IMG/VR virus record: IMGVR_UViG_3300028840_008185
Span: 124,001-188,000 of that record
Strand: one strand, 5' to 3'
DNA: 64,000 bases
Shown here: positions 1 through 43,991 of the stretch, one piece after another
Layout of the letters: each line of letters starts with the position of its first letter
How positions within the stretch are numbered: position 1 is the stretch's first letter
Made by a program: the position numbers and the translations under genes
The notes under the pieces: generated by a model
Seen by the model: only the letters and a program-made list of their open reading frames with translations
Database searches by the model: none
What the model was told of the DNA's origin: nothing

Positions 1-426
1 TACAATATCCCCAATCGCCGGGGCAAGTATGACGGCAACTCCGAGAAACCCCATCACGCAGCCGACAAAAGCATTCTTCGAAAGCTTCTCTCCCCTTCTC
101 CTGGCTATGAAGACAACCAGAAGTAATGGCCAGAGATAGTTGGCAAGAATGGCGTATTGAATTGTGAGACAGAAATAGATGGCCAGGAGAACAAAGATGT
201 CGTAAAAGCCGTTGAGAAGCGCCAGCTTAAAGAACTTGCCCCTATCTACTTGCACTTTTGATTCGCCCTTAGCGAAACCTATGAAGCACAATATAGAGGC
301 TGCGATGCCGTTATACATAGTAGCCACAGCAGCCCAATCTCCGTTCGAACAGACAAGCATCTGTTTTACAAAGGGGCTCGCTGAAGCCCAGACGATAATT
401 ATGAACCAAAAAAGGATGTGAAACAT
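1..426 (-). CDS. EamA/DMT-family membrane transporter (3' end runs off window)
   Basis: Manual translation from ATG at 426: MFHILFWFIIIVWASASPFVKQML...LLNGFYDIFVLLAIYF...YAILANYLWPLLLVVF...GEKLSKNAFVGCVMGFLGVAVIL. Five hydrophobic segments with the W-x-S, Y-L-W-P and (G)EKL...G..LGV..I pattern of one EamA repeat. Not in the ORF track. Confidence 0.75.
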   Translation of the reverse strand, partial: MFHILFWFIIIVWASASPFVKQMLVCSNGDWAAVATMYNGIAASILCFIGFAKGESKVQVDRGKFFKLALLNGFYDIFVLLAIYFCLTIQYAILANYLWPLLLVVFIARRRGEKLSKNAFVGCVMGFLGVAVILAPAIGDIV

Positions 427-742
427 TTCAACTCAGATCCGCACCGATGGGTTAAAGGCCCCGTATGTAATGGCCCAAAAATAACATACCGGCTCTTCCT
501 CCAGAGAGAATTCTCCACCAAGAGCAGGCCCATAAACGAAGTCCTAAACCCCGGCCAGGTCTTCACACGCCTGGATTTTATCTCCACAACAACACCAACT
601 CTCTTTCAAGCTCGCTTCTCAGTGGAAAGGAAATAATCGCCCTGAAAGGAGCACGACATCTATACTTCATATCTGCCCTCTTAAATACCACCTCACTTAC
701 AGACGCCTCAGCTGGATACATGAAAACTGGTTCAATAACCAT
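399..742 (-). CDS. Two micro-ORF family members: 578..742 (MVIEPVF, 54 aa) and 399..587 (MEIKSRR, 62 aa)
   Basis: Coupled overlaps and family N-terminus; 578..742 translated manually. Confidence 0.6.
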
Positions 743-1172
743 ATTTCATTTCATAAGCTCGCTCGCGAGCATCCTCCGCAAGAAACTGCAAATAATCGTT
801 GTACCTTTCCAGCACTTTTTCGTCTGCAAGCTTCTCATCAATCTCGGGCACCACCCTCTTTCCATTACACTCATAACAAGGAACATCATAGAAACCGGAC
901 ATATAGTTTTCTCGATCCTCGTAGCTCCAGTCTCGATCCCATTCATCGCCCGTGATTCCATGCGAGTCGATACTTGGATTCACATGCTTCCCTTTACCCT
1001 CGCAAGTCGGACAGACCTCAAACCTAATGGGAACTCTAACCTCCTCCTCACAATCGCCACCACCGCACTCACAATCCTCACCACAAGGCAGCGTAAGAGT
1101 GGCCATTAGTCTATTTTCATCAATACTATTCCACCATTTACCTTTGAGCGCTGCAAAATCTCTACAGTCCAT
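732..1172 (-). CDS. Hypothetical phage protein with DnaJ-like CxxCxGxG zinc motifs
   Basis: CPTCEGKG and CYECNGKR motifs. Confidence 0.7.
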   Translation of the reverse strand: MDCRDFAALKGKWWNSIDENRLMATLTLPCGEDCECGGGDCEEEVRVPIRFEVCPTCEGKGKHVNPSIDSHGITGDEWDRDWSYEDRENYMSGFYDVPCYECNGKRVVPEIDEKLADEKVLERYNDYLQFLAEDARERAYEMKYGY

Positions 1173-2520: not shown

Positions 2521-2648
2521 TTTCTCTATTCCTCAACCCAACCGAAAGCAGGATTTTAATAAGGGCCGCTTTTTCTTCGGCACTCAAATCACCCCTAAAA
2601 GAACTGCGGAATTTTAGTAGCTTATCATACAAAAGATCGAGTTCGATA

Positions 2649-8825: not shown

Positions 8826-9016
8826 CTGATTACGTGCCTCTTATTTTTGCTCCCCCAATGATCATATTCGCCCGCTACACATCTATTCTTCCAGACAGCC
8901 ACACACCCGGAAGTACATCTCTGGTCGTAGGATTTGTAGTCATTCAGCCCGCAGAATCCACAACTTCCCAGAACCACGGAAAGAACCAGTATGATTAGTA
9001 TGCTTGAGTATTTCAT
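8762..9016 (-). CDS. Cys-rich putative lipoprotein
   Basis: Lipobox-like VLGSC followed by several Cys. Confidence 0.6.
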   Translation of the reverse strand: MKYSSILIILVLSVVLGSCGFCGLNDYKSYDQRCTSGCVAVWKNRCVAGEYDHWGSKNKRHVIRCSCYMKNGEMNGIYIRRRAE

Positions 9017-11140
9017 GTTCCCATCCTGTAAGAATTTCGCCTAAAAGGGTTCGTCCAGTGGGGCTCCAAAAGTCTCCAATGGGTTGAAAAATTCTCTCCA
9101 TCTCAAGAGGCGGCCAAACTCTCTTAATAAATTGTTCCACAACATCATTACGATGTCTTAACTCTATCACGAGCTTTCTTCCTTCTTAAACCTTACCACG
9201 CTCACGAAGTCAAACCCCTCGTCTTTAGACGGCTCCTGAAGGAGCCCGGCAAACTTCATCATCAAATCGTCGGGCACTTTCCTATACTCTGGCCTGGACA
9301 GATTACGAGCCAGGCACACCGAGTAGGGCGTATCCAAAAAGATTGCCGACACATGAACGCCAGCATCCTTGGCTTTCCTTATATATTTATATCGAGTTTT
9401 TGGCGAAAGAAACATCGCGTCAAAAACCACAGTAGTATCTTCGTCGCTTTGGAGTAATTCGTCAAACATTTCATCGGCTTTTTTCCAGGCAATAACGGCG
9501 TCGTGAGTCGTCCAGCCACCATCCTCATAGCCAATGTGATCATCTGGCCTTACAATAACCGCGTCTTCAAAGCCGGCTTCAATCAAGGTTGTCTTACCTG
9601 AGGCTGGTAAGCCTATCAAAAGTATCAAGGATTTCATCTCTTATGTTCCTCACTTCTTACATCCACAATCTCTTGCGCACGCATCATACGTCTCTTTACA
9701 TTCTAAACTACAAGGATACCTTGCGCAGTCCCTTAAGCACTCATGCCATACATCATCACATTCCTCAAGGCAACTTGGAAGACAAGTGCTTGAGGCCGGA
9801 AGCATAGGAGTGATCAGCAAGAATAATGCGAATAGAAAGTTCATCCAATTTCTCCTCTAAATCCCACATCACCACTTTCATTCTGTTGCGAAATAAGTGG
9901 GAACCGTTATATATGCGACTGAGTATAACGCCCAGATACGGAGGCTCACAAGTCACATAGATTTCTTTCCTATCTAACATGCCAATTGCGATTTCCATCG
10001 AGCACCCCGCGCCAGATAATATCCCTACCCTCATACTCCTCAGTAAATATTTCAGGGCACAGAAGAAAAAGAATGTGGTTGCTTAATTTATCCCAACTAT
10101 AGGGCAGCTCCTCAACAATGCGACCCCGTATGTCATTGACAATCTCTATTCTCATCGCATCACCTTACACCAAAAGTCTCTCCCATCCATCCAACTGCTA
10201 TAGAGCCAAGGAACCTCAAAGAATATAGAAAATCGATCTACTAATAGATTAAATAAATCACCATCTATATATTTTCCGATTCTGGGGCCACCAAGGCGGC
10301 TTGTCTTAGAAACGATTCTCACAGCAGCTCATTCCTGGACAACACCTTCTTCACCCACCTGGCCACATCATAGAGGTAAGCCGCGTGAAGCGTTATTGTT
10401 GCTCCCTGCCTCTTCCTATAAGCTCCGCTGCTCTCCCTGAACTCAAAGAGCTGGACCCTCACAGAGCCAGAAGGCTTTGTGATAATTGGATACAGCTTTG
10501 TAAGGGGAGCCAGAATCTTATGTATTTCCACAGCCTTCTGGCCAGAAATCCTGAAGCTCTGGGAGCCGCCATACTTTTCGCCCTGGAACTGGGTGATCTG
10601 GATGGAAGTCTTCACTTCATCTGGGGAAGCAGGAACTTCCGGCTCTTCACTATTGGGGGTCTTCATTTCTCAAAGCATTCCTAAGCTGTACGCCAAACAG
10701 ATGTCTGGCCATACTGTTTTTTATGGGGTTAAGAGGCCACTCAAGATATATAGAACAGATATATATATCAGTCATGACAATCGCGAGCCTCTTGGCATGG
10801 TAATCTTTGTATTTTTTAAAATAAGAATCAATCTTCATCTTCGTCACGGACAGGATACTTATCCCTTAGCTCTTTCAAGCCGTCTGCCCCAAACTGATCA
10901 ATAAGCTCCCACATTCCCACCTCGATCTTCTGTCCTATGAGATGCGGATGAGGCTTAATGAATTTCAATGAGTTCCCCTTCTTGATGAAATAGGGTTCCA
11001 TGAAAAAACTCCTCCCACAAGCGGGCCTTAAAAATAGACTTCGTGAAAAACATATGATTCCATATGTGTCCACACCCATAAGGAGATACTACGGCAGCCC
11101 TATTAAAGAATGGCCGCCTCCTCACTTTTATTTCAGCCAC
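8940..11140 (-). CDS. Micro-ORF family cluster: 8940..9170, 9765..9998, 9970..10155, 10152..10322, 10650..10838, 10955..11140
   Basis: Starts MIELR, MEIAI, MRIEI, MRIVS, MKIDS, MAEIK; W/F-rich helical bodies; translational coupling. Confidence 0.6.
9167..9637 (-). CDS. P-loop kinase (AAA_33 / polynucleotide-kinase-like)
   Basis: LIGLPASGKTT Walker A, VVFDA, CLARN..R...VP, P...EGFD. Confidence 0.88.
   Translation of the reverse strand: MKSLILLIGLPASGKTTLIEAGFEDAVIVRPDDHIGYEDGGWTTHDAVIAWKKADEMFDELLQSDEDTTVVFDAMFLSPKTRYKYIRKAKDAGVHVSAIFLDTPYSVCLARNLSRPEYRKVPDDLMMKFAGLLQEPSKDEGFDFVSVVRFKKEESS
9650..9844 (-). CDS. Secreted Cys-rich peptide
   Basis: Signal peptide followed by 10 Cys with CxxxC spacing. 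Confidence 0.65.
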   Translation of the reverse strand: MNFLFALFLLITPMLPASSTCLPSCLEECDDVWHECLRDCARYPCSLECKETYDACARDCGCKK

Positions 11141-11746
11141 CTATCCCTCCAAAACCATAAAAGATCCGTATTCGTCTGGGTGAATGTGGTTGAAAATCTT
11201 CCTGAGTTTCTTTCCCATATGGCCAACGAAGGTTGGTGGACTTCCAGTCTTTTTACAGAAGTAATGGACCAGATGTAGGAAATCTGCGTCCATCTCTGAG
11301 GGGGTCCAAGGGGCGGAGCGACAGAAGAAAATTGCCTTTGCCGCATATGTGTAGTTCCTTACTGCCTTCTCGACTTCAAATTTGGGAACAATTTTCTTGA
11401 GGATTGAGATCCAATTCCCACAAGTGAGATCTGAATCAGGCCAGTAATCATCAAAGTGATGATCAAAGTCGGTGACAATCATATCATCGCTGTAGTGTCG
11501 CATAGCGACCTTGACCATTTCGGCGTGGCACTCTGCTACATACACAGGGATCTTTCTGGGAACCTTCAGCTCCTTGATTTCTTCAAGAACTTCTTTCCAT
11601 TCGGGAACCAGGAGGTTGAGCGCCCCACGGCCAGTCGGTGGCCTACTGTGAAGCCTCGCCGTGCAATAGCCGCAATGATTAGTATCATCTTCCTGACAGT
11701 CGCCTGTGATATAATCCCAGTCGATAGATAGAATACGATTAGCCAT
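11141..11746 (-). CDS. UPF0489/arginase-fold-like metalloprotein
   Basis: ILSIDWDY, ECH, DFDHHFD, CGNW and RS..WTP motifs. Confidence 0.6.
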   Translation of the reverse strand: MANRILSIDWDYITGDCQEDDTNHCGYCTARLHSRPPTGRGALNLLVPEWKEVLEEIKELKVPRKIPVYVAECHAEMVKVAMRHYSDDMIVTDFDHHFDDYWPDSDLTCGNWISILKKIVPKFEVEKAVRNYTYAAKAIFFCRSAPWTPSEMDADFLHLVHYFCKKTGSPPTFVGHMGKKLRKIFNHIHPDEYGSFMVLEG

Positions 11747-13129
11747 TAGGAATCCCTCATTTTTTCTACCCATGTCCACATACCAAAGGGTAATGATATA
11801 TTGCGCACAAGCCTGCCCCAAAGCTCGTTCAAGACAAGCCTATCTACATAAGAGTTATAGTTCTTGTGGAGCCGGTCATACGCACCCACCTTATCTCGAA
11901 CACTTATCATTATACCACCAGCAAAAGAAGCACAACAAGCCCAATACTTAAGACAAGCCACAAGTATAGCTCCCACTTGGAACTATACATGCCCATAAAC
12001 TTCTTGAACCATTCATTATTATCGGACATCAGATCCTCCTGTCATTCCTTCCTATTAACTCCGCCACCAGATTGGCTGCTCCCCAGAAGGCCCGCGAGCG
12101 GGCAATATCCATGGCTCCAATCCTCTTGTCGGTGAAGCATTTGGCGTTGTGAGCAGCACTCTCGCTTAGTTTTCTAAAGTTGTTCTCAAGCTCATGAAGC
12201 TGTAGCAATCTCTCTGCACTTGGAAATGCTAAGCCCATCATCTTATCTTCCTTATTAGGTCTACTGCTAAGGTTTCGCCCATTTGTTCATAGATTTCCTT
12301 GTTAAGATCGCCCCAAAAATCAGACTTAAGGCACCCACAGATCTGGTTCCAGAGCCATGAATAACCGGAGCCGCAGGAACACGTTAAGTGTTCTTTGCAA
12401 CTGTTATTAAAGCTCATGCTAAAGTTCATGTAGCTCACCCGTGATTGTGTGTTCCGCCCACTGCTCAAAATGCTGATGCCGCATAGGGGGCAGCTTCAGT
12501 ACGAGAAGTCCCAGGGCGGAACGCACTGGATCGCTCTCACTTAGCGTCCAAAGATCCCAGCAAATTTTTCGCTTTTCAATACGCATTTCGAATTCCTGCA
12601 AGCCTACGAAACATCGGAGCAAAAATGTGTGCGAAAAAGAAATATTCCGGTGCAATCCACATAGGCATCTCACAGATCTGATCCCTGATCTGCGGGCCTA
12701 TTCGACCATACCTATCTTTTTTACTCTGTATATGGATAATCATCTTTGTTCCAGGTAAGTGGGCCGCGATCTCCATCGCCGCCGTGTTTCCACTTTCTTA
12801 TAACTTTCCAATAGTTATAATAGAAGGGCCACGTAAATAACAAATCATCAGCGCCCTCAAACTCATCTTCAAAGCCCAGCAGCTTAAAGCCACACTGTTC
12901 GTCCATGAAATAAAGAAGGCGGATCTCAAGCTGGTGTTTGTATTTAACGCGTATAGTCATCTCTAATGTCTCTATCCACATTGCTGAAAGATCCATACAC
13001 CGGCAAAAAAGATCTCCATAGGACATCAAACTCATCGCGAAGCTTGCCGCCTAGCCCACAGTCAAGGGAGCATCCAAGATTGACAATCTCCGTTCTAATA
13101 CCAACGGATCTTTTAAACCTCAAACTCAT
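11746..13129 (-). CDS. Micro-ORF array: 11746..11910, 12029..12241, 12238..12429, 12419..12586, 12576..12743, 12721..12960, 12944..13129
   Basis: Overlapping 54-79 aa ORFs, e.g. SWLWNQICGCLKSDFWGDLNKEIYEQM and NELWGRL. Confidence 0.65.
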
Positions 13130-13697
13130 CTACATATCCCCGCTGTTCTTTCAGCAGATCTCCAATGGGAAGCACAGGATCCAAACCAGCAAGCTGGCGT
13201 TTGATCAAGCGGTCATAGAGAACAAGATACACAGCCGCCGCAAGATTGACGCAGTAGTGTGTTGGAATCACCACAAAGCGGTGGCAATGTCGCAAGTAAG
13301 TCTGCGGAATGCTTCCATCTTCCGGGCCAAAAACATACAGAGCATTTTCGGGATGCTCGAATTGAGGTAGAAGTTCAGCGTTCTGCCTCAACTCTATGGC
13401 CACCGGAGTAGCAATCCCCTCAAATTCATCAAAGATATAGTCAAACTGCCTCAGCTCCACATCCTTATACCCCTTCATCCGTTCTTCGCGAGGCAGACGC
13501 TTTTTCATTTCAAGGTCAAGTTGAACTCTATTGCCGCTATACCAAAGCTGCTTTATCCCAAAACAAGAAGCAGCCCTCAAGGCTGCTCCAACATTATGGG
13601 CGAATTTAGGATTGCTTAATGCTATTGCTGGCGTGATCCCAGACTTCTTCTTGTTCTTTCCGTATGTCGCTGATACGATTTCACCTGAGGAAGTCAT
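13113..13697 (-). CDS. SpoU/TrmH-family (SPOUT) RNA 2'-O-methyltransferase
   Basis: NPKFAHNVGAALRAASCFG (motif 1), VFGPEDGSI (motif 2), VIP...CVNLAAAV (motif 3). Confidence 0.9.
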   Translation of the reverse strand: MTSSGEIVSATYGKNKKKSGITPAIALSNPKFAHNVGAALRAASCFGIKQLWYSGNRVQLDLEMKKRLPREERMKGYKDVELRQFDYIFDEFEGIATPVAIELRQNAELLPQFEHPENALYVFGPEDGSIPQTYLRHCHRFVVIPTHYCVNLAAAVYLVLYDRLIKRQLAGLDPVLPIGDLLKEQRGYVDEFEV

Positions 13698-14578
13698 CCA
13701 TCACCACCCCTCTGGCCCAGCTCCATAGGACATGGGCGGCAATAAGAAAATCTCCGAACCCTTCAATCTCGTAATCATCAAACTCGGACTCGTCTAAACC
13801 GAAATTGTCGCACAAGAAATCAGCGACTCTGTGCTTTATTAGACAATGACTAATTGGTTCTATCATGTAGGTATTTCCTAATTCCCAAGTATGTTTGTTT
13901 TCTCAGCAATGTCCTGAGGCTTACAACAGCATCTCCGTCCCTATTCACGCCAAGCTTTTCGCGCATTTCTATCCTAACTATCCAGTTATAATCCCACGGC
14001 ATCTCTGGACTCCTCATGTCAATTTTCATCGAGAAGCTCCTTGTATTCCAATAGCTTGTCTTCTCTACTGTCCCTGCCGAGCTTACAAAATTCTCCGCCC
14101 AAGATAAGCATAGCTGCATCCTGGCCTACTCCTACCCAACATATACAGAGAATATCACAAACACAAAGATGCCCTCTTGTCTCTTGGCCATAGCCACTGA
14201 CGCATAGTTCAGTCTTGCCGCAGATGACTGGAGTATCTTGGAAGTCTGTGATGTCGCTACATTCGTATTGGAAAGTCGGTGGAGGCTCCAAGTTTCCATC
14301 GCCGCAAGTAACCAGACATAAAACGGCGGAAAAAGCAATGGGCCTCGTTAGGAAGTATGATACGCCATGGAAGCGGCACAAATTGTTTTCTTTCCCACTT
14401 AACACCCTTTATCTCCATCTTAAATTAACGAGCCTTTCATATAAAGGAGTCTTTCATATAGCATTTCCCAAAGCACATGAAAACAATCCTCGCCCCAATT
14501 ATCAATTGCTATATCAACAATCTCCCCGCCATAGGAAACAACAACCCTGAAATCAGTGGATTGTTTAGCTTCTATCAC
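13681..14578 (-). CDS. Micro-ORFs 13681..13866, 13850..14029 and 14420..14578 flanking a Cys-rich lipoprotein-like gene (14019..~14360)
   Basis: Starts MIEPI, MKIDM, MIEAK; lipoprotein segment LCLVTCGDG. Confidence 0.55.
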
Positions 14579-16424: not shown

Positions 16425-16988
16425 CACGACCCTCCCCTAGAACATCAGCAAGAATAAACAGGATCACATCTTCGCTACACTCCCTCTTCAACTGGCCCCC
16501 TATAAAACTGAAGGTGTGAGCAGGCATTATCTCAAACCACCGCTTATTGAGGTGGCTGTGCGGGTTCCAATAGTGGTTGCGCGGAAACTTCCGCGTAAAG
16601 TAAGTGCTTACTTCCATGATCTATACACCTTTGCCAATCAAACGTATGTAGGAAATCCCAGAAAAAAGTCTCACATCGAAGTTGTATTTCATCCTGGAAG
16701 TCATCCCACAAGACATATCTTATAGGTCGCCAAAAATTTTCATCAAAAAACAGCCAATCAACACCAGGTCGGCCACGGGCAAAGTAAGTGCTAATCTCCA
16801 ATTTCTCTCTCCCACAAATCAGAGTAGATTATGCTATTGTTGACTCTGGACAATAAGAAGTGTGCTCCTCCCCACAAGTTTCTAAACCTGACCCTAAGCC
16901 CATTGTTAAACCAAAATCCTCCCCCTTTGTTATACCAACTGTAGTAAATGAAATCTTGCACATTGTTGAGGGAGCGTAGGTCAATCAC
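16417..16988 (-). CDS. Micro-ORF array: 16417..16617, 16544..16801, 16791..16988
   Basis: MEVSTYF/MEISTYF near-duplicate starts; YVLWDDFQDEI..FFWDFL. Confidence 0.65.
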
Positions 16989-17896: not shown

Positions 17897-19185
17897 TCAT
17901 TGCTTTCTTGCTCCTTTAAATAGCCAACCTTTTAGTTGTGATACAAGTGGAAAGCTCACGCCTCTAAAGAAAGCGAAAATCTTTCCCTCAAGACGAAGAA
18001 CATAACCGGGATACAATTTGAGTGAGCACACATCTGATATTATATCTGATAGATCTTCCCACTTTCTATTCTCAATTGTCTTCATATCCAAGCGCTCTCC
18101 AAATGGGATGAAAATAACTCCAGCCAAATGTGCGTAAATCTGCGCCCCAGCTTCTACCTATCAGATCAAAGGTCACATAACAACAACCAAAAGATTCCTC
18201 AACAAACCCAATCTCAAGCATCTGATCCCAAAACTCATTGGCGGAAGATAAAGGCTTAGTCGTTAAGCTCATCTTTTACCTTGTTTCTTAACTTCAAAAA
18301 GCATCTTGTTATGAGACTATCCACAGTGAAATTATCTATGGGTAGAAGTGGTTGATGATCCCTGTTCAGCCGCCAATCTATCTTCTCGAAAGAGTCATAG
18401 ATGCCGTTAAAAAATCTGGTTCTAATCATCGGAATGCCCAGTTGAAAAGGATGCTGCGCAACACATTAGTCCCATCGCCCCTTCTAACAATCGCAAATTC
18501 AAGTCCGCTGCGCAAAAGAAAGTTAAAAAGCTCATTGCCCAAACGATATTGCTCAATAGCTCCTAAGTGCTGCTTTAATTGACCCCACACTCTTCTCCTG
18601 CGTCTCAAAGAATCGTTGGCCAAAAGCATTCATCACCTCGTAGGCGGATCAAGCGCCTCAAACATCCACTCCCAGAGTTCATAGTGAAACCTGCCTATTT
18701 GACCACCAGCAAGGCTGTCGTAGAATTCATGAGCATCAATCGTGAAGTCATCCACGAAGTCTTCGTTCCACTGCCTACGCATAAACGTAATAAGGCGATG
18801 CCTCACCGGCATCGCCCTGTCGCTTGAGAAGTAAAGTTCAACTTTCATCTATCCGCCTCTCGCCTTATAATGTCGTAGAGTTGATCGTAGAACATGCGTG
18901 TGGGAATGATGAATCGAAACATATCGTCAAGCCTAGATAGGTTGTAGAAATTAGGAGGGAAATCCCAGGAATTAAACCAATCGTTAATTATATTCCTAAG
19001 CTCTTGAGATTTGATCACTTTCATCTGCCTCACAATCCCAGCACTAAACACATTCTCCGTCTCAAAGCCGAACACAGCTGATCCTTGTTGAGCCGCGACA
19101 TGAGAAGCCAGTCGGATATTAATTCACAACTGCGAAGTTCGTTTAAAACCCTCGCCCACGTCATCTTTCTGGGAGCTATTTCCAT
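17897..19185 (-). CDS. Micro-ORF array of 7: 17897..18085, 18072..18272, 18256..18429, 18426..18629, 18633..18848, 18845..19024, 19030..19185
   Basis: Consecutive coupled 51-71 aa ORFs with EFWDQM, RVWGQL, YELWEWM and FYDQLYDII segments. Confidence 0.65.
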
Positions 19186-19259: not shown

Positions 19260-19586
19260 TTAGTCAACCACCCGACGCCAACCTTCGGGGGTAAACTCCT
19301 GCTGCCTACGGATCTCGTAGTCACCAGGGGGCAGAATGTTGGTCCCATGATCCTCGTGATCGATGTGGACCTCCTGGAGAGCCCGCAGATACATCTGCGT
19401 GCCGACCATCAGCAACATGGCCTTCTTCGCAGCCAGATCGCTACTGCGGATACGATGAGCGTGGCCAGTGACCTCGCCCTCCACAAGCACAGTCTCGCCA
19501 GCCTGCTCCTTGGCGCCCTCGGGAACCGCGTCCACGGGAACGATCAGAACATCGCCCTGCCTCTGAATACCTCTTTCTTTACTCAT
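19260..19586 (-). CDS. RQGD / GEVTGHAH protein (usual neighbour of DUF6745 genes)
   Basis: RQGDVLI...LVEGEVTGHAH...HEDH...LPPGDYEIRRQQEF...RRVVD; strong AGGAGG RBS; GC-rich codon usage. Confidence 0.85.
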   Translation of the reverse strand: MSKERGIQRQGDVLIVPVDAVPEGAKEQAGETVLVEGEVTGHAHRIRSSDLAAKKAMLLMVGTQMYLRALQEVHIDHEDHGTNILPPGDYEIRRQQEFTPEGWRRVVD

Positions 19587-19836
19587 TGCTTCCTCCTTTT
19601 ACAGTCGTCGCGACAACGTGGAGTAATTCTCCACTAGTGGGATCACGATATAAGTTGTGAGCCACCATACTACTAATCCATCCTCTTTGACCAGGGAAAG
19701 GCCAATAATAGTTATTCATCATATCAGCACTGTCCCAAAACTCAAGTATAAAAAAGCTAGTTTTTGCTACACCCTTACATGCTTTTATTAGTATATTTCA
19801 CCTCCCAGCCACTTTTAATTGGCTATTTCTTATCCC

Positions 19837-23498: not shown

Positions 23499-25072
23499 TC
23501 ACAAGGTCTTGGTGTGTTCATCCAGAATCTCCTTAACCATATGTAAAAGTGTTATACGCTCCTGAGGCTTCCACCAAAAATTACGCACAAAGACCACCAT
23601 AACTCCCAAGCTAAACAGCCTGAAAAAGATTGGTTTTTCGCTATTCTTCTGAGGCTCTAATCTCATCCCTCAACCTATCAAAAGCGTGTTCTGGAACAAC
23701 ATGCCCAGCTTTCCTGTGTTCTTCAAGATGTTCAAGAGCTTCTTCTGCTGTCTTCATCAAGGTGTTCTTGTGCATCGTACAGTTTGGGCATTCCACCTTG
23801 CCACCTCCACCCTTACAGTTAGGACACCAGCAGCTCTCGCACACTTCTCCGTCGCAGTCTGGGCAGTGATCATAGGGGCTAAAACCAACCTTTCCTGGTT
23901 TCTCGCCTTTCTCCTTGGCCTTATCTGACAGGCGAACATACTCCTGCCATCGCAAGCCGCCAGTGAAAATCGTATTCCCAAGAGGAGCCAAGCGACAAGC
24001 GCAGCACTCAAAGCCACCTTCAAATGTCTCGAACAGATATACATCACCATTCGAAAATCTACAGTAAGCCATTCTTAACCTCCTCTCTCGTCAGCTCTAG
24101 GAACTCCCAAGCAACAGGCTCTTCATTCCAAAAATCCCTGGGCTCGTAGTACAGCATAAATATCTGCTCAAGGACATTGAAAAGAACATCTTCATCGTTG
24201 CGAGGGGTTTTACGGATTTCGATTTTCATTGGCCTTGTCCAAAGAACGCTCTAAAATCAGATAGAAAACCATGGGTTCGAGAAGATCCAACGAAAGCACC
24301 GACTCGGAAATATCCCACCACTCATCATCGCCGCATGAATCGTAAAGCCAGTCGTGAGCTGCATATGGATCATGACTTCTAATCTCAATCTTCATCGAGC
24401 CCATCCGATAGTGTTGTCTCTAGTTCTATGCGACAGATTTCGGCTACAAGGTCAAGAACCTCGTGTAGCTTCGAAGTCTTATCCAGCATAGGTATGTCGT
24501 AGTAATACCACAACCAGTCATCCCAAACAATTGGGTCATGTTTTCTGACTTCAAGCTTCATGATGAGGAACCTCCGGAGCATTATACGTGGGGAGCACCT
24601 TGGCCCCCAAACATTCCAGCGTATTTCTAAGAAAGAGAATCATACCCTCAAATATATCGCCCAGGGGTTCAGGATGCTCATCGAATTTCAAGACCCCAGA
24701 CTTCTCAGATCTGCGGGCTCTACAGAGTTCTATCATCAAGTCTTAACTCTCTTTCAAGCATGTCGTTAAGCTCCAGCGCAACGGGATCTAACTCACTAAT
24801 AATCTCATTAACAGCGTCATCAAAATTGTATCCATCAATGACACGGAGATGTTCATCTCTTTTAGTGTCCCAGTGACCTGGGCCAATTAAAACTTTGATT
24901 TCCATAGTGATTTCTCATGTGTTCCGCTAAGCACGAGCTTCTCAACCATGTCAAGCAACTGTGATAAAGTGGGATCTAGTGGTCCGATGACATTACCTAT
25001 TACGCCTTCTATGTTAATATCGACATGGAACAAACTCCTGTGCGTTGGACCAAACCTTTTCTTTATTTCCAT
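23499..25072 (-). CDS. Micro-ORF array: 23499..23666, 24059..24229, 24210..24395, 24385..24561, 24551..24739, 24720..24905, 24887..25072
   Basis: Starts MRLEP, MKIEIRK, MKIEIRSHDP, MKLEVRKHDP, MIELC, MEIKV, MEIKK; adjacent pairs visibly homologous. Confidence 0.7.
23641..24072 (-). CDS. Hypothetical Cys/His-rich phage protein
   Basis: MAYCRFS..DVY...CCAC...HLEEHRKAGH.VP; CxxC insert. Confidence 0.7.
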   Translation of the reverse strand: MAYCRFSNGDVYLFETFEGGFECCACRLAPLGNTIFTGGLRWQEYVRLSDKAKEKGEKPGKVGFSPYDHCPDCDGEVCESCWCPNCKGGGGKVECPNCTMHKNTLMKTAEEALEHLEEHRKAGHVVPEHAFDRLRDEIRASEE

Positions 25073-25082
25073 TTTGTTCCTC

Positions 25083-25159
25083 GGCACCCCCGGAGAGATT
25101 TGAACTCCCGACCAAAAGCTTAGAAGGCTTCTGCTCCATCCTGGCTGAGCTACGGGGGC
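25083..25159 (-). tRNA. tRNA-Arg(UCU)
   Basis: Full cloverleaf; anticodon arm GAAGC-CTTCTAA-GCTTT; T-loop TTCAAAT. Confidence 0.92.
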
Positions 25160-25332
25160 GGGTAAGCTATTTACGTCGCCATTGTTTCCTAAAATATCTC
25201 CTCAGTGTTGGACGAAAGACTGTTATTAGGTATGCGTCCAACATTCTCCACACCGCTGCCCCTGCAAAACTCCTGTTGCTTTTCAGCATATTGAAAATCC
25301 TGGCACCAGGGCGTCTTGACTCAATCATGGCC

Positions 25333-27753: not shown

Positions 27754-28338
27754 CTAATCATTCCCATTTTTCCTCTTCCATTCTCTCCATTCTAACATAC
27801 TATTCAACGCATACATCATGAGGTTGGGGCGGCTAGAAAAGTTCAGGCTTAGCTTAGAATAGAGGATGCGCTCTATAATGGAAAGTTTGGCTTGCACACC
27901 CCAAATCATATAGCGAAAGGGACCTCTGTGTTTTATTTCCACACTACACCCAAGGCCCCATGGACGGCCACACTCCATATTTGATCCTCTCAAACATGGC
28001 ACCTGGCTCCCAACTACGCAAAGTTCTTAAGATTTCGCTGAACCATGGAGAAAAGCACCTAATCCACATATCCCTTTGTATATGCTCCATGCTCCCTTCA
28101 AACGATTCTCTTTCCCAAGGCTTCCAGGCAGTCACAGTTAAAGGCTTCCATTTTCCTACTTTGATTTCCATATCGCATCCGCAAGCCAAGTGAAGTCCAT
28201 CAGTGTGGAAAGATGTATGGGCGCCAGCCTGCGGCGTCCGTCAAGACGCCGATAAAAACGATTCTCATCAGGCGACGGCCATAGTTCCAAAAAGAAAATG
28301 CTTCTCCTATTGTGAGGAGGAATTAGTCTAATTTCCAT
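27754..28338 (-). CDS. Micro-ORF array: 27754..27942, 27944..28171, 28156..28338
   Basis: Starts MEIKH, MEIKV, MEIRL. Confidence 0.65.
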
Positions 28339-37956: not shown

Positions 37957-39075
37957 TAATTCACTATGTAGTCAGCCTCCCAATTGGCGAACCCCAGGGC
38001 TTCAACCGCATCGAAAGCATCCTGATCCTCAAGCTCGCCCTCGCCAATCTTCAACAGCACATTGTCGAGATCCTCAACGATGTTGGGGTTGTCTCGCTTG
38101 ATTCTCTGCTCGCTTACCCAAACCCCAAAGTAGCGCTCATAGGAAAGAGGCATTTTCTCAACAGTATCGTAGAGAGCATCGGGGGAGACATAAAAGGGCA
38201 TCGTCCACCCATCCCCGTGCTGCACCTTGATACAGACAATCTTCTCACCGCCGGCATAAAACTCCGCTTCCAGAAGTTCAACCGGCAGCCAAAAGGTCTT
38301 CTTCTTGCCAGTGGCGTCAGCGAGATAGGTTGTAGCTAGTAGCGCTTCCATATCACCACCCAATCCTTTTTAAAGCAAACCAAACTCTAGATCTCATTTG
38401 GTTTTTGAAAAAGTGAAAACCGCCCGGATGGCCCTTGTTGCTCCTAACCCTGCCGCCGATGTTGCGCCAGAGTCTCAGCCATTTCTCATCCCAGCCATGA
38501 AAGGCAAAGCCCAACCGCTTCCAAAGCCTATCTTGTTCGATGGGCTCTATACCTGGGCCAGGAACGTTTGCCACTCTTGCTCCTCCTGATCTTTTCGCGC
38601 CAACTTCATCTCTCTACGCCTCATGTCTTTTATTTCCGCAACCTTTCTCTTTAGCGCCATGTCGGCAACGGCTTCTGACTGGGCAACATCAGCATGTAGT
38701 TCAAGAACGTGCTTGTCGTCTTTTGTGGCCAACTCGCCCTCAATCATCGGACAATGACCCTCATGAAGAGTAACGACATGGCCAGGATAAACCTTGCTGA
38801 AGATCAGCATGTCTTCCAAGCATCGCTCCTCAGTCCCGTGGCAAGAAAGGGCAGGGAAAAGACCCGCAGCGTCATAGACCATACAAGGGCTCTGTCCATC
38901 AATTAGCCAGTGAAACATCTACCTCTCCTTGTTCATTCGCTTCAGCACTTTACTTCGTAGCTTCCGAAGCTGTTCGCGAGCACCCTCCGCACTTTCCCTA
39001 TTTGGGTCGGCATATTCAGCCTGCTCGTCCAGCCACTTCTTAATGACTGCATCTTCAAACTTTTCAAGCAGTTTC

Positions 39076-39918: not shown

Positions 39919-40000
39919 TGACCGGGGAGGGATTCGAACCCTCACACCCAGAGGTAGGGGATTTTAAGTCCCCGATGTCTACCAGTTCCATCACCCGGCC
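39919..40000 (-). tRNA. tRNA-Leu(UAA)
   Basis: Cloverleaf with long variable arm; GGGGA-CTTAAAA-TCCCC; GAGGG-TTCGAAT-CCCTC. Confidence 0.93.
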
Positions 40001-40008: not shown

Positions 40009-41242
40009 TTAAAGCCGCCCTGTCCAATACTTCACGTAAAGCGTCCACGCTGATTGCCAAAGCTCATCTAATATGCGCCTCAAGGGCCACGCTAAGCAAA
40101 CCTCCAGGGATCGCTTTAAGACTTCATCTTTCAGCGGCCCTCCCATGTCATTTTCTCTAGGTTCGATTATCATTGCCCCAGAAACTTTCCCCACAGTTTC
40201 AGGTCATCACACAGCTCAAGAATGTGGCTCTCTAAGCCAAAGCCCAACCTCTCCATAATGGTTGGAAAGAGGCCAGAGTGCATGAACAAACCCCAAAGCT
40301 CATTTCGACCTATAGCCCTCGGCTCAATCACCATAATGGCCCCGAGTATCCCAGATTCATGCGCAGAAAGTCGTAGAACCAGAGAAGGTTAGTGACCATT
40401 GGGTTAAGACCACCGCGCAACCGATATGCGACTCCACCCCAGAGCTTACCGAAGGGAAGCGCCATATCTACACAAAGCAAATCGCTCTTGCCGCTTCTTC
40501 CTAAGTTAATCTCCATGGTCTAACTCTTTCATGCAGGGTATTAGTCCGCTTGACCTGAGACGATGAATGTGCGAGCCTATTGCCCTATCAAACTGGCGAA
40601 TGAGTCTCCTCCGCACAAATTCAGCAACAGTCATACTAGGGTAATGTGGCCACAACCTAAGCTGACCCCAAAGCTGATGGAAAAGCTTGTGCCCAATCCC
40701 ATCTCTTTCGCCGTTGTATCGGTTCTTTATCTCCATCAATCAGGCAGCCTCTTATACTTGTAGCCACGAGCCATGATGGAGAATACAGAACCAATCCTGG
40801 CCCCGCAAACCCAAGCCCGAATGTCGTAGTTGTCTGGGTGTCGCTCAAGCACCTCCTCACGGGTGACTTCCCTTTGTCCCTTTTCCGCTCCGGTTCTTGG
40901 ATCTAGTTCAGTTTCCAGAAACATTTGTTCCAGCCTTTCCTGCAAATTCACGAAGTTCGTCCCAGAGACGAACCTTCCATTTGTGCCAAAGCTCTCCAGC
41001 CCAAGGCGCTTTGCGTCTAGCCTTCCCCAAAGTATGATTAAAGAGAAAAGCGTGACCCATTCGATATATGTAGTTACTCCTGGGCTCAATCACCATAACT
41101 TATATCTCCTTATGTAAGAATCAAAGTTATGGCGAGTGATTCCCATAAGGTATTCGTTAATGCTCGCCATAAAATAAAGGCCGTGAATATTCCACAGACT
41201 TGCCTTACGACAACCCCTATTACGCTGCGCCTTGATCTCCAC
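40009..41242 (-). CDS. Micro-ORF array: 40009..40173, 40170..40334, 40328..40516, 40506..40739, 40908..41096, 41090..41242
   Basis: Starts MIIEPR, MVIEPR (x2), MEINL, MEIKN, MEIKA; segments LFHQLWGQL, ELWG, KLWGGV, RLWDEL. Confidence 0.7.
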
Positions 41243-42075
41243 TAAGCAACCCTCCTCACTTCCCGCTTCCCACTATTCACCACCACGCAAGTCTTATGCT
41301 GTGCCTTGGGAGCCCCACAATACCAGCACTTTCCGTCATCGTCGCTGTATGCATGGTTCTCTGGCCTCAAGCTCTCCAGGTTCTCCCGAAGGGTCACACG
41401 ATCCTGCTTGGAAAAACCGGTGCCCTCCTTCTCCGCCAAACGCTTCCTGTTTCTCAACGCCTCAGTGATAAAGCTCATTTAATCCTCCTCTGGCTTAGAG
41501 AGTCCACCAAAATCTACAGTGAAGCTCCTCGTTGGCTTTAACCCAGCGATCCAAGACATCATCGCCGTCGCAGTCTTCACAGGTCATAAAGTTGCACACG
41601 CCCCAGGTCTTACCGTCAAGGTCTTTAACTTGTCTGTTGTCGCCATAAACCCAACGCCAAACATCCCCGACCTTGAACTTATATCCACACAAATAGCAGC
41701 GGAACTTTTCCCCTGGCCCATGTCCACCCCATTTGGCCTTAAGGTCTCTCTCCGTAGCCACTTGCGGCTTTTGGTCCGTGAAGCTCATTTCTTTAATCCT
41801 AATTTACAAGTAGCGCCCACCAGCACCAGCCTGCGAATGCTGCTAAGGCTATTGCCAAAACAACCTTCCCAAACATAATCAAATCGTCCATTTATCACTT
41901 AGCCATCGCCTGCGCTGCACGGTGGTAGTCCGCCTCGATCTTCTTCATGGCGTCGGTGGCAGAGACAAGGCCACGGGTTCCAGTCGAGATGGTCTCGATC
42001 ACCCTGTTGCCGTCCATGACCTTGATTTCCTTGTTCCCTTCCCAGAGAAGTTCAAGGCCAAAGGCTTCCAGTCGT

Positions 42076-43991
42076 CTACGGATCATAGGTTTCATTTGCT
42101 TCCTCCTCCAGAAAACGGATTAACTCTTCCAGTTCTTCTTCGGTGGGTTCTCTTTGAGGTTCCTGGTTGAGGCGGGGAGAGCCCAACTCCCTTTCCACAT
42201 CTTCATCAAATCTCCGACCCAAACGCCGATCAAGTTCGGTGTCGTAAGTTACTTGTCCCCAGTAATGAACTATCCAATAGGCAGCCTCAAGAAGCTGGAG
42301 ATGTAATTCATTTATAACATCACGAACTTTGAACATATTTTTAAGTCTAATCTCCATCAGTCCTCAACCAGATAGTATTCCACATTCCACCACAGCTCGT
42401 TATCATCTTCGGGCAGACCAAGCCAACCAGCAGCCATAGATTCCGAGTATGCCTCCCATGCCGCCTGAGCATCAGCCGGGCTCAGAATGTACCCACGCGT
42501 AGCAGCGATGCGCACAATACGCTCGACATCATGCTGATATTCGCCCTCCGCCTTATTCTTGAATCTCAGAGTTTTCATGTGCTCTCCAAGGTAGGCGTGG
42601 GCACATACGTGTGTGCCCACGCCTTTGGGTGCTACTCCTCAGCTTCCTCCTCCGAGCTTTCCTCTGCCTCGGGCTCCTCCTCCTGCTTCTGGCCCTGTCC
42701 GCCGCCCTGGATCTTGCCAACGATTTTGCCCAACTCCTTGTTGAACTTTTTCCTTTGCTTCTCGAACTCTCTTTCGGCTTGGACCATCTTCTCGCGCAGC
42801 TCGAAAGCCTGACGCATTAGGCCCAGTGCCTTATCCTTAGCCTTTTCTGCACGCTCCTTGTTGATTTCCTTGAGAGCTTCCTCAAGGACATCGCTCGTTT
42901 TCATTGGCTTGGCTGCGTCAAACCCAACCAAATCCTCCAAACGTGCCGATGGATCTTTCGTCTCTTTTGCCATTACTTCACTCCTTGCCGTCAAGAATGT
43001 TTTGGATTGAGTCGATGCCCTTCCGAACTTTCTCGGAGTCCTCGACAACTCTTTCTGCCTTAGAGACGCTAGCCTTCATGCCCAACAGGGCCATACGTAG
43101 CTCACTGATGGGATCCGGCGAAGCCTTAGACAAAACCCTATCTTTAAGGTCACTAAACATCTTACCCAAAATCTCCTGGTCTTCGGGGAGGCAGGAATGG
43201 CTCAGTCTCCAGGTAAGCCCCTTCTTCTTGGCCCGGAAGATGCCCCTGATAGCGTGGCTTACAGGAACCTCGTTCGCCTGCCGCCTCATTGCTGTGAAAA
43301 CTTCTCCCTCGATCTCGGCGTCGGATTTACTCTCGATCTTTCTCACACCTGCAAGAGCTTCCTTTGCGGCGTTGTAAATCCAGATAAGATCCTCGGGCGT
43401 TAGTTTCTTGTTATGGTGTGCTAAATGCATATTGTATCTCATCCTCCTATTTCGGCGTGCGAGGCGCATGTTTACTCTTTGTTCTTCCAAACATCCCGCA
43501 GCCGCACGTACAGGAATGGTGGAATGGCCATGCGATCAATGTAGTCTCTCAAGACCACAACCTTAACGGTGTGAATCACGTTGCCAAGTTGCTTCAACGC
43601 TTCGCCCCAGATGTTCCTCGGTTCTGGCACTTTGATTTCCATTTTGTCTAAGTCCCATTTCCAGTGCAAAAGGTGAATCGAAAGCCCATCCCCACTACCA
43701 GCCAAGGGTGTATAAGCTCCTGGATATATATACTGCAACATGATCCACATTCTATTACTAACCACATTCCAAGGATATTTTACTTCGCCCATATCCTTTT
43801 TGGGGCGTATAGGTTTAATTTCCATGTGGATTCCAGAAGCCTAACCAAGCAGTAAAGCGAAGACGCAGCACTTCCGAAAGCGACTGAACCCCACCGCCGA
43901 ACCTATAATACAACTCCAAGGTCAAGTGTCTCCAGACTGCATCAGGAATTCGGGGAATGCGGTTGAGGGTTATTCGCGGCTCAATCCTCAT
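42076..43991 (-). CDS. Last micro-ORFs: 42076..42357, 43472..43825 (two fused units), 43815..43991
   Basis: Starts MEIRL, MEIKP...MEIKV, MRIEP. Confidence 0.65.
42593..42624. terminator. Strong hairpin downstream of 42632 ORF
   Basis: aggcgtgggcaca(ta)cg(tg)tgtgcccacgcct inverted repeat; no U-tract on the minus strand. Confidence 0.55.

What the first reader, a model, noticed from the sequence alone, without database searches (positions are those of the whole stretch)
399..43991. Library of ~50 hypervariable micro-proteins that may supply the missing repeat tract of a DUF6745 scaffold in trans
Seen: about 50-55 minus-strand ORFs of 46-90 aa occur in arrays of 2-7 between ordinary genes. Most begin with a short beta-strand-like M-[EKRV]-I-[KED] motif (MEIK, MKIE, MRIE, MIEP), followed by an aromatic amphipathic body with ~4/8-residue periodicity: LFHQLWGQL (40506), RVWGQL (18426), WLWNQI...DFWGDL..EIYEQM (12238), NELWGRL (11746), RLWDEL (40908), VLWDDF (16544). 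They look more AT-rich than their neighbours, are densest around the DUF6745 (20713..21597) + RQGD (19260..19586) pair, and stop after 44 kb. In this DUF6745 only ~30 non-repetitive residues lie between VVDSP and the WDYY..AFY helix. Recalled knowledge: bacterial DUF6745 proteins typically carry xLWxQL/xVWxQV repeat tracts at this position and sit next to RQGD genes. Inference: a split, plug-in system with one conserved scaffold, one partner and dozens of interchangeable specificity subunits docking through the N-terminal strand, e.g. a diversified anti-defence or target-recognition repertoire.
Basis: partly seen in the sequence, partly recalled or inferred. Interest (0 to 1): 0.92.

Follow-up and report, generated by a model that had tools for sequence, protein, structure and literature searches.

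The report
Detached repeat micro-proteins beside phage DUF6745
A huge phage carries about 35 tiny, very fast-evolving genes that look like the split-off and degenerated middle piece (a four-residue repeat tract) of a widespread but unstudied two-gene phage module, which gives a concrete way to find out what that module does.

Summary
The window is the all-minus-strand accessory region of a 318-kb phage contig. The micro-ORFs are real. Thirty-four ORFs of 46-117 aa start with M-[EKR]-I-[KED]-x-R or M(x)IE[PL]: 35 of 137 gene starts before 44 kb against 1 of 59 after. They are 3 GC points below their surroundings and almost unalignable to each other.

Long DUF6745 proteins, found in prophages of many phyla, carry 9-70 in-phase x-x-[Q/S/N]-[L/V] tetrapeptide repeats exactly at the VDSP/WDYY joint. 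An RQGD gene (phrog_27831) lies beside them.

The new result is that repeat-less DUF6745 lineages keep the tract as separate tandem micro-ORFs: 12 of 23 short-form lineages against 0 of 38 long-form ones, with at least two independent fissions. All three N-terminal classes seen in the window sit on pure repeats in relatives: MEIV... in a 79%-identical phage, MIE[LP]E.Q, and MKIDLI.

The window's own ORFs have lost the repeat. Their profile shows no similarity to it (P 0.74), and only two ORFs reach E about 0.01. Docking through the N-terminal strand and an anti-defence role remain untested inference. The only functional precedent is non-homologous: mycobacteriophage Tweety gp54.

The parts
20713..21597 (-). 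Short (repeat-less) DUF6745 protein, 294 aa. The tract position is occupied by about 35 non-repetitive residues between VVDSP and CIWDYY.
   Evidence: Pfam PF20530 E 1.6e-20. There are 30 full-length homologues, mostly 281-335 aa. It falls in a 100%-supported clade of short forms.
19260..19586 (-). RQGD protein, 108 aa, the constant partner of DUF6745. It is all-beta, with invariant Q10, G11, H44, H80 and a C-terminal Asp.
   Evidence: phrog_27831 E 8e-18. Alignment A3. AF2 pLDDT 90.9. No PDB fold match.
21615..21927 (-). Two motif micro-ORFs directly upstream of DUF6745: MRVELIRAI.. (21745-21927) and MRIDLRDW.. (21615-21755).
   Evidence: This slot has no nucleotide homology to the 82%-identical relative L006, which has a different MKIELIDV.. 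ORF there.
19806..20741 (-). Variable slot between DUF6745 and RQGD. It holds a 67-aa W/F/R-rich ORF (20538-20741) and a 236-aa membrane ORF (19837-20547).
   Evidence: Window 19806-20621 is absent from relative L087 and 19806-20714 is non-homologous in L006.
18426..19075 (-). Micro-ORFs directly downstream of RQGD: 18845-19075 (internal MKVIKSQ..), 18633-18848 (MKVELYF..) and 18426-18629 (RRVWGQLKQHLGAIEQYRLGNELFNF, period-4 L).
24059..25328 (-). Largest array, seven motif ORFs of 53-61 aa: MKIEIRK, MKIEIRS, MKLEVRK, MIELCRA, MEIKVLI, MEIKKRF and, after tRNA-Arg, MIESRRP.
   Evidence: These include the only BLAST-detectable pairs, 24720/24887 and 24210/24385.
40170..41242 (-). Array of five: MVIEPRA, MEINLGR, MEIKNRY (40506-40736, KLFHQLWGQLRLW), MVIEPRS (40908-41096, VRLWDEL) and MEIKAQR.
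   Evidence: 40506 hits the repeat-micro-ORF HMM at E 0.0078. It has no homologue among 5.8 billion proteins except a 99% copy.
42076..42357 (-). MEIRLKN.. micro-ORF, 93 aa.
43472..43991 (-). MRIEPRI.. (43815-43991) and a 117-aa ORF made of two MEIK units in frame (43472-43825). These are the last members; the family stops here.
27754..28338 (-). Array of three: MEIRLIP, MEIKVGK and MEIKHRG.
   Evidence: 27944-28171 has period-4 p 0.0015.
22357..22572 (-). MIEPRQT.. micro-ORF, 71 aa.
23499..23666 (-). MRLEPQKN.. micro-ORF. Its N-terminus matches L007 MKIKPQKN.
13681..14578 (-). Four members: MIEPISH, MKIDMRS, MEIKGVK (this one overlaps a longer ORF) and MIEAKQS.
12238..12586 (-). 12238-12438 has no N-terminal motif but nine in-phase units (WLWN QICG CLKS DFWG DLNK EIYE QMGE TLAV DLIR). 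12419-12586 starts MRIEKRK...
   Evidence: Period-4 p 0.002. HMM E 0.011.
16544..16801 (-). MEISTYF.. micro-ORF, 85 aa (YVLWDDF).
8940..10838 (-). Scattered members: MIELRHR (8940-9170), MRIEIVN (9970-10155) and MKIDSYF (10650-10838). The first two overlap other ORF calls.
399..742 (-). MVIEPVF.. and MEIKSRR.. pair at the window's low end.
38353..38574 (-). Motif-less candidate, 73 aa (DRLWKRLGFAFHGWDEKWLRLW).
   Evidence: Period-4 p 0.04. Ranked 4th with the combined repeat HMM at E 0.5. Weak.
11746..11976 (-). Candidate ORF with VLNELWGRLV. It overlaps the 226-aa ORF 11141-11821, so the call is uncertain.

Best explanation
The micro-ORFs are a diversified paralogous family descended from stand-alone tetrapeptide-repeat proteins. 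Those proteins are the detached middle module of DUF6745 proteins.

Shown: DUF6745 + RQGD is a conserved phage/prophage gene pair. In temperate phages the DUF6745 protein has three parts: an N-domain, a helical tract of 9-70 x-x-[Q/S/N]-[L/V] units, and a C-domain. In several lytic or huge-phage lineages the tract is missing from the protein and is encoded next to the pair as 1-18 tandem micro-ORFs.

Inferred: in this phage the detached module was amplified to at least 34 copies spread over 44 kb. It diverged so fast that only the N-terminal hexapeptide, Trp/Phe/Leu/Arg richness and a faint period of four survive.

Inferred, weaker: each micro-protein is a short amphipathic helix or hairpin. 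It acts with the DUF6745-RQGD core, for example by packing on the helical stump left at the joint, as an exchangeable arm that sets which host or rival-phage protein the core engages. The likely setting is counter-defence or inter-phage conflict.
For: - Pair and tract.
- Split forms: L002/L003/L005 have 7-18 pure (xxQV)n ORFs after DUF6745-RQGD. L048 runs DUF6745, an 84-aa DQLR-repeat ORF, then RQGD. L085/86 have (SWAS)n ORFs. L138 has four MKIDLIGKSV(xxSL)n ORFs, then RQGD, then a short DUF6745. L092 has four MIE[LP]E.Q(xSQL)n ORFs. L068, L011, L007 and L069 are further cases.
- Co-occurrence: 12 of 23 short-form lineages against 0 of 38 long-form lineages have such ORFs (Fisher p 8e-7).
- Independent fissions: the C-domain tree needs at least 2 (best estimate 4) long/short changes. 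The window's 100%-supported clade spans pure to fully degenerate micro-ORFs.
- Degenerate forms are homologous to repeats: L007/L069 MK[IL]KPQ ORFs against repeat ORFs give hhalign probability 92%, P 6e-7, over 59 columns.
- Link to the window: L087 is 79% identical in nucleotides and encodes MEIVRRNRNQFCWYQLWDQFRSQSFWSQLGDQLWDQL. Window ORFs 40506 and 12238 hit the repeat HMM at E about 0.01. A PWM built from relatives' N-termini scores 6 of 90 window small genes at or above 4 bits, against 0 of 41 after 44 kb and 1 of 258 on the non-coding strand. Period-4 signal.
- Hypervariability: slots are replaced between 80%-identical genomes, and one tested member is an ORFan.
- The tract is predicted helical, inserted between two confident domains.
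- Prophage context of the long forms.
Against: - The window family profile against pure repeats gives P 0.74, and against L007/L069 only the first 8 columns align (P 0.0075).
- HMMs from relatives do not retrieve most window members.
- Gln, the hallmark residue of the repeats, is depleted in the window family (1.8%).
- M-K-I-E-like N-termini are not rare in proteins generally.
- Most members lie far from the DUF6745/RQGD pair.
- Eleven short-form lineages show no micro-ORF in the DNA available.
- No physical interaction, expression or phenotype data exist.
- PADLOC, NCBIfam and the PDB give no functional hint.
Confidence: 0.5

Rival explanations
1. The micro-ORFs are an independent, fast-evolving paralogue family of early accessory proteins (host take-over or anti-defence singletons). 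They share an N-terminus only through tandem duplication. Their nearness to DUF6745/RQGD is coincidental in a region made almost wholly of small genes.
For: No profile similarity to the repeats. Members are dispersed over 44 kb, and the largest arrays are 3-20 kb from the pair. Small genes make up most of the region anyway. The bodies are ORFans.
Against: The same three N-terminal classes head pure tetrapeptide repeats beside DUF6745/RQGD in L087, L092 and L138. The L007/L069 intermediates are homologous to repeats. Micro-ORFs sit directly beside the pair in 12 lineages and never beside long forms.
Confidence: 0.25
2. They are packaged internal proteins of the T4 IP type. The conserved N-terminal hexapeptide would be a capsid-targeting or protease-cleavage signal, and the variable body an injected anti-restriction or anti-defence effector.
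For: A conserved short N-terminus with a hypervariable body and cassette-like replacement between close relatives resembles the T4 IP loci (own knowledge).
Against: No head or protease genes lie nearby. Relatives put the same N-termini on simple repeats next to DUF6745/RQGD. Prophage long forms fuse the repeats into a cytoplasmic-looking two-domain protein. MEIKxR lacks the (L/I)-x-E cleavage pattern.
Confidence: 0.07
3. They are precursor peptides (RiPP-like substrates). A short N-terminal recognition motif would be read by DUF6745/RQGD or by the window's radical-SAM enzymes, and the variable cores would be modified.
For: Many tandem small ORFs with a shared N-terminus and variable cores. RQGD has invariant His/Glu/Asp residues that suggest catalysis. 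Radical-SAM genes lie at 4364-5821 and 50073-50948.
Against: A six-residue 'leader' is far shorter than known leaders. In long forms the same tract is an internal segment between two folded domains. The radical-SAM genes are not adjacent to the arrays, and the cores are not Cys/Ser/Thr-rich.
Confidence: 0.05
4. The ORFs are not genes. The repeated start motif would be a DNA- or RNA-level element such as a promoter or RBS cassette, as in the PeSL units of T4-type phages.
For: Two 'MEIK/MELK' starts (19837-20547 and 35689-36558) are in fact GGAG-N6-ATG ribosome-binding sites. Only 19 of 35 members have a clear SD.
Against: There is no conserved sequence upstream of the start. Synonymous codons vary within the motif. 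The ORFs tile one strand with ATGA overlaps at 95% density. Open frames with the same N-terminal type persist in replaced slots of relatives.
Confidence: 0.03

Closest known systems
Long-form DUF6745 proteins (Pfam PF20530) with an internal tetrapeptide tract, paired with phrog_27831 (RQGD), in prophages of Alphaproteobacteria, Actinomycetes, Planctomycetota and others
   Same: The C-domain and N-domain are the same, and so is the RQGD neighbour. The tract is of the same chemistry as the micro-ORFs of relatives.
   Different: In the long forms the tract is covalently inserted, at 9-70 units. In the window the DUF6745 has none, and the presumed descendants are separate, amplified and no longer repetitive. 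No function is known for either form; no paper in the library mentions DUF6745.
Mycobacteriophage Tweety gp54 and its relatives Che8 gp57 and PMC gp51
   Same: It is a phage accessory protein whose core is 15-48 tetrapeptide (A-A-x-x) repeats between unique N- and C-terminal regions. The gene is non-essential and hypervariable. Changes in repeat number tune counter-defence against the Phrann gp29/gp30 abortive-infection system (PMC2884959; PMC9262239 section 14).
   Different: gp54 has no DUF6745 domain and no RQGD-family neighbour was detected (gp55 has no Pfam hit and was not scanned against the RQGD profile). It is a single fused protein, not a split one. It is an analogue and the only functional precedent, not a relative.
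Central conserved region of Type I restriction HsdS subunits (for example the EcoR124 TAEL repeats)
   Same: A four-residue repeat in a helical coiled coil acts as a molecular ruler between two recognition domains (own knowledge). The L015 tract hits the PADLOC HsdS model in that region at 3.8e-7.
   Different: The hit is probably compositional. HsdS has only 2-3 repeats, and no DNA-binding domains are present here.
T4-type internal proteins and hyperplastic-region cassettes
   Same: Small, non-essential, rapidly replaced genes with a short conserved N-terminus (own knowledge).
   Different: No capsid or protease link. Here the N-terminus heads a repeat module tied to DUF6745/RQGD.
Bordetella phage BMP-1 bbp36 VR2
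   Same: A variable-copy short repeat inside a non-essential phage gene, cited as a parallel to Tweety gp54 (PMC2884959).
   Different: Its unit is 24 bp. It was not examined here, and no relation to DUF6745 is known.

Membership tests
DUF6745 (PF20530) | Match to the Pfam model above its gathering score | tested here: met
   Window 20713-21660: 73.7 bits against a cut-off of 27, E 1.6e-20, profile positions 54-206.
DUF6745 long form | In-phase tetrapeptide tract between the N-domain strand (..V.V.SP) and the W..FY helix | tested here: not met
   The longest in-phase Q run is 1-2 in the window protein and its 11-member clade, against 9-70 in long forms.
RQGD family (phrog_27831) | Profile match, plus the invariant Q-G-[DE] N-terminal motif, the TGHxH motif and a C-terminal Asp | tested here: met
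   E 8e-18. The invariant columns are present in the window sequence.
DUF6745-RQGD gene pair | The two genes lie on one strand within a few kb | tested here: met
   They are 1.1 kb apart in the window. They are adjacent in 32 bacterial loci and in most phage loci.
Stand-alone tetrapeptide-repeat micro-ORFs (defined here) | ORF of 35-120 aa with at least 5 in-phase x-x-[Q/S/N]-[L/V] units | tested here: not met
   No window ORF qualifies. TRF finds no 12-nt arrays. hhalign P is 0.74. Only 40506 and 12238 reach HMM E about 0.01.
Stand-alone tetrapeptide-repeat micro-ORFs (defined here) | N-terminal class shared with repeat-bearing members (MEI.xR, MIE[LP], MKI[DE]) | tested here: met
   L087, L092 and L138 against the window classes. 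PWM transfer.
Stand-alone tetrapeptide-repeat micro-ORFs (defined here) | Position directly beside a short DUF6745 and/or RQGD, on the same strand | tested here: met
   21615-21927 and 18426-19075 flank the pair. Most members, however, lie 3-20 kb away.
Tweety gp54 family | Sequence homology of the N- and C-terminal regions, plus A-A-x-x repeats | tested here: not met
   gp54 has no DUF6745. Its sequence is unlike the window proteins.
T4-type internal proteins | Capsid-targeting sequence ending in an (L/I)-x-E cleavage site, and packaging into heads | not testable with these tools
   The motif M-E-I-K-x-R lacks the pattern and some MKIE/MRIE members are ambiguous. There are no virion data.
Known anti-phage defence or anti-defence families | Match to PADLOC or NCBIfam models | tested here: not met
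   No hits for DUF6745, RQGD or the membrane ORF.

The most novel reading that the evidence does not exclude
One invariant DUF6745-RQGD core is loaded in trans with any of dozens of interchangeable helical micro-proteins, and each retargets the core to a different host defence or rival-phage protein. This would be a germ-line-encoded specificity library in a phage. The evolutionary intermediates, from fused tract through detached pure repeats to diversified micro-proteins, are all still visible in nature.
Probability: 0.2. Interest if true: 0.9.

Novelty: new variant of a known kind. Interest (0 to 1): 0.72.

Why it matters
DUF6745 and its RQGD partner are abundant. The pair occurs in prophages of several bacterial phyla and in cultured phages such as Microcystis phage Ma-LMM01. 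No paper in the library mentions the domain.

The repeat tract exists either fused or as separate micro-genes, and fission happened more than once with the pieces kept next to the pair. That argues the tract is a functional module needed by the pair. It also gives natural 'cis versus trans' experiments.

If the only functional precedent for phage tetrapeptide repeats applies (Tweety gp54, a tunable counter-defence protein), this would be a large unexplored class of tunable phage-host conflict genes. This phage would be its most expanded repertoire. The case also shows how arrays of ORFan micro-genes in huge phages can arise: by detachment, amplification and decay of an internal repeat.

Tried and rejected
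- All-vs-all BLAST of window ORFs links only two micro-ORF pairs.
- An HMM from the 24-25 kb array finds no other member.
- An HMM from the L007 micro-ORFs has its best window hit at E 0.077. The combined iterative search does not grow, with a best E of 0.075.
- hhalign of the window family against pure repeats is negative.
- TRF finds no repeat DNA in the window.
- Megablast of 6 kb against 50,697 phage records gives no match. tblastn of DUF6745 finds two distant phage hits.
- The first genome scan with a 31-sequence alignment failed for lack of a conserved stretch.
- A PDB sequence search with the RQGD profile and PDB Foldseek searches with the RQGD and DUF6745 models give nothing significant. 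BFVD returns only other DUF6745 proteins.
- PADLOC and NCBIfam give nothing for DUF6745 or RQGD.
- Tweety gp54 was tested as a possible DUF6745 member and rejected.
- A search of 5.8 billion proteins with micro-ORF 40506 returns only a 99% copy. Its contigs are 99.95% identical to the window, so no dN/dS could be computed.
- A DNA-level cassette reading (PeSL-like) was considered and rejected, because nothing upstream is conserved and the codons vary.

Full report
WHAT THE WINDOW IS. All 64 kb is coding on the minus strand. A simple gene call gives 197 genes at 95% density, mostly under 150 aa, with five tRNA genes and a steady negative GC skew. The window is part of IMGVR_UViG_3300028840_008185, a 318-kb phage contig. 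Nothing in 50,697 GenBank phage records is close. Recognisable genes are accessory enzymes: two radical-SAM proteins, a SpoU methylase, a histidine phosphatase and a DSP-like phosphatase.

CHECK OF THE OBSERVATION. Thirty-four ORFs of 46-117 aa begin with one of three related N-termini:
- MEI[KRNS].. (14 occurrences)
- M(x)IE[PLAS].. (9 occurrences)
- M[KR][IVL][EDK].. (12 occurrences)
The total is 35 occurrences, because the 117-aa ORF 43472-43825 contains two units in frame.

The statistics support a real family:
- The motif is on 35 of 137 gene starts before 44 kb and on 1 of 59 after (Fisher p 1.4e-5). About 4 would be expected by chance.
- Codons at the motif positions vary synonymously and nothing upstream is conserved. 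The constraint is therefore on the peptide, not on a DNA cassette.
- The ORFs are 3.3 GC points below their local surroundings (p 2e-6).
- They have twice the Trp content of other genes. Phe, His, Leu, Arg, Ile and Pro are enriched; Ala, Lys, Gly and Gln are depleted.

The bodies are almost unalignable. BLAST links only two pairs, and an HMM of the largest array retrieves no other member. Period-4 hydrophobicity is a weak collective signal: combined p is 5e-4 at T=4.0 against 0.25 at T=3.6, and there is no signal in small genes beyond 44 kb.

Three points are overstated. 'Most' should be about 40% of the small genes. The arrays are not densest at the DUF6745/RQGD pair, although motif ORFs do flank both genes. 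A few members overlap other ORF calls.

THE RECALLED KNOWLEDGE IS CORRECT.
- ORF 20713-21597 is a DUF6745 protein. It has 30 full-length homologues, mostly 281-335 aa, so the repeat-less architecture is a conserved subfamily and not a truncation.
- A repeat-rich micro-ORF found next to a homologue (L011) was searched against 1.84 billion representative proteins. It gave 375 hits. The top 150 are mostly 350-550-aa proteins with the matching tract at about residues 80-250, and 121 of them have a DUF6745 C-domain. Pfam confirms this.
- In 54 bacterial loci the long forms carry 9-70 in-phase units of x-x-Q-[LV]. Other chemistries also occur: xxSV, xxNL, xxSL, and AAxx or SWAS in GC-rich genomes.
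- The tract lies between the '..V.V.SP' strand and the 'W..FY' helix, the joint where the window protein has about 35 non-repetitive residues.
- An RQGD-family gene is adjacent on the same strand in 32 of these loci. Both the window and the L002 versions are phrog_27831.
- The bacterial loci are prophages, with integrase, ERF, YqaJ and HTH genes nearby.

THE SPLIT IS REAL IN OTHER PHAGES. Beside short DUF6745 + RQGD, the tract reappears as separate small genes:
- L002, L003 and L005: 7-18 tandem ORFs of 49-78 aa that are pure (xxQV)n.
- L048: DUF6745, then an 84-aa DQLR-repeat ORF, then a 58-aa ORF, then RQGD.
- L085/86: four (SWAS)n ORFs.
- L138: four MKIDLIGKSV(xxSL)n ORFs, then RQGD, then a short DUF6745.
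- L092: four MIE[LP]E.Q(xSQL)n ORFs.
- L011 has two and L068 has one.
- L007 has nine MKI[KERN]xQ ORFs inserted between DUF6745 and RQGD, plus one directly upstream. L069 has MKLKPQ ORFs.

Such ORFs were found in 12 of 23 short-form lineages and in 0 of 38 long-form loci (Fisher p 8e-7). The lineages are not fully independent. A C-domain tree needs four long/short changes, of which at least two are forced by well-supported branches. L002/L005 and L048 nest among long forms. Independent fissions that keep the pieces next to the pair argue that the tract is a functional module needed by DUF6745/RQGD.

IS THE WINDOW'S FAMILY THAT MODULE? Evidence for:
- The window belongs to a 100%-supported clade of 11 short forms. 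Its micro-ORFs run from pure repeats (L092, L011) through semi-pure (L068) and degenerate (L007, L069) to the window.
- The degenerate L007/L069 ORFs are homologous to the repeat ORFs: hhalign probability 92%, P 6e-7, over 59 columns.
- L087 is 79% identical to the window across DUF6745 and RQGD. It encodes MEIVRRNRNQFCWYQLWDQFRSQSFWSQLGDQLWDQL.., a window-type N-terminus on canonical repeats.
- The other two window classes head pure repeats in L092 (MIE[LP]) and L138 (MKIDLI).
- Window ORFs 40506 and 12238 hit the repeat HMM at E about 0.01. The top five hits of a combined HMM are all window micro-ORFs.
- A PWM built only from relatives' N-termini transfers to the window.

Evidence against:
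- The window family profile shows nothing against the repeats (P 0.74), and only eight N-terminal columns align with L007/L069 (P 0.0075).
- Gln is depleted, and there is no 12-nt repeat DNA.
- Most members lie far from the pair.

I put descent from the detached module at about 0.5-0.6.

HYPERVARIABILITY. L006 is a relative with 82% nucleotide identity in DUF6745 and 74-83% in flanking genes. Against it, the micro-ORF slots (window 21617-21938 and 19806-20714) have no detectable nucleotide homology, yet each genome has an open frame with the family N-terminus there. L087 lacks 816 nt that include the 236-aa membrane ORF. Micro-ORF 40506 has no relative among 5.8 billion proteins except a 99% copy, whereas the DUF6745 gene has 30.

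STRUCTURE AND FUNCTION.
- AF2 of a long form (L026, 42-sequence alignment) gives confident N- and C-domains and a helical hairpin for the tract at low confidence, pLDDT 49-73.
- RQGD is a confident all-beta fold (pLDDT 90.9) with invariant Gln, His, His and a C-terminal Asp.
- Neither model matches any PDB structure. BFVD returns only other DUF6745 proteins.
- PADLOC and NCBIfam give nothing, apart from a probably compositional hit of the tract to the coiled-coil centre of Type I HsdS.
- No paper in the library mentions DUF6745.

The only functional precedent for phage tetrapeptide repeats is Tweety gp54. There, changes in repeat number tune counter-defence against Phrann gp29/gp30 (PMC2884959; PMC9262239). 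gp54 has no DUF6745 domain, so it is an analogue only.

The proposed mechanism is therefore inference, and was not tested: helical micro-proteins acting as exchangeable arms of a DUF6745-RQGD core in phage-host or phage-phage conflict.

VERDICT. The recalled background is verified. The 'split scaffold' idea is strongly supported for the family at large and moderately for this window. The docking mode and the anti-defence role are open.

Noticed in passing
window 25083-25159, 39918-40000, 51499-51574, 56023-56099, 60129-60203: Five tRNA genes (Arg-TCT, Leu-TAA, Glu-TTC, Lys-TTT, Met-CAT) are scattered among the small genes on the minus strand. tRNA-Arg interrupts the largest micro-ORF array.
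   Followed up: no
window 1-64000: GC content rises steadily from about 0.43 to 0.56 along the window, while GC skew stays negative throughout.
   Followed up: no
window 43472-43825: One 117-aa ORF contains two complete MEIK units in frame (MEIKPIR.. and MEIKVPEPR..). It looks like a fusion of two neighbouring micro-ORFs.
   Followed up: partly
window 19806-20621 (ORF 19837-20547): A 236-aa predicted membrane protein lies between DUF6745 and RQGD. It is absent from the 79%-identical relative L087, which has an HNH endonuclease after RQGD instead. Its apparent 'MEIK' start is really a GGAG-N6-ATG ribosome-binding site.
   Followed up: partly
window 15680-16048, 33023-33409, 51593-52333; 31598-32089 and 57428-58300; 49353-49538 and 61098-61340; 56133-56375 and 63840-63950: Other paralogue sets, unrelated to the micro-ORF family, share 35-60% identity over 30-80 residues.
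   Followed up: no
window 4364-5821, 50073-50948, 13113-13697, 16985-17629, 22565-23053: Accessory enzymes: two radical-SAM proteins, a SpoU-type methylase, a histidine phosphatase and a weak (below Pfam cut-off) dual-specificity-phosphatase-like protein.
   Followed up: no
L159, L048, L015, L018, L021, L124 (N-termini of DUF6745 proteins): DUF6745 proteins themselves start M-x-K-I-x-K-L-T-x-E-Q (for example MKIDRLAPHQ and MIEKLTSEQ), which resembles the micro-ORF N-termini (MKIDLI, MIELEAQ, MKIEKQ). The micro-ORFs may have arisen by a deletion joining the first codons of a long-form gene to its repeat tract.
   Followed up: no
L085/L086 6664-7243; P0030; L072 (Tweety gp54): Repeat chemistry tracks genome GC. 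AT-richer phages use xxQV, xxQL or xxSL. GC-rich ones use SWAS, AAxx or ATRA units like those of Tweety gp54, although gp54 lacks DUF6745.
   Followed up: partly
L007 12642-13079, 3092-4360, 10476-11243: The related huge phage encodes a ribosomal protein S12/S23-like gene, adenylosuccinate synthase and Thy1 near its DUF6745 module.
   Followed up: no
L093, L094, L095: The same phage is present in at least three other metagenome records: 99.95% identical over 2.4 kb in JGI 3300018080 and ENA ERZ27256796, and as a 143-kb contig (Ga0180438_10000161) matched at 100% over the RQGD protein only.
   Followed up: partly
L015 repeat tract (protein residues 90-157): The tetrapeptide tract matches the PADLOC Type I HsdS model in its central coiled-coil region (E 3.8e-7). 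The hit is probably compositional, but it fits a helical 'ruler'.
   Followed up: no
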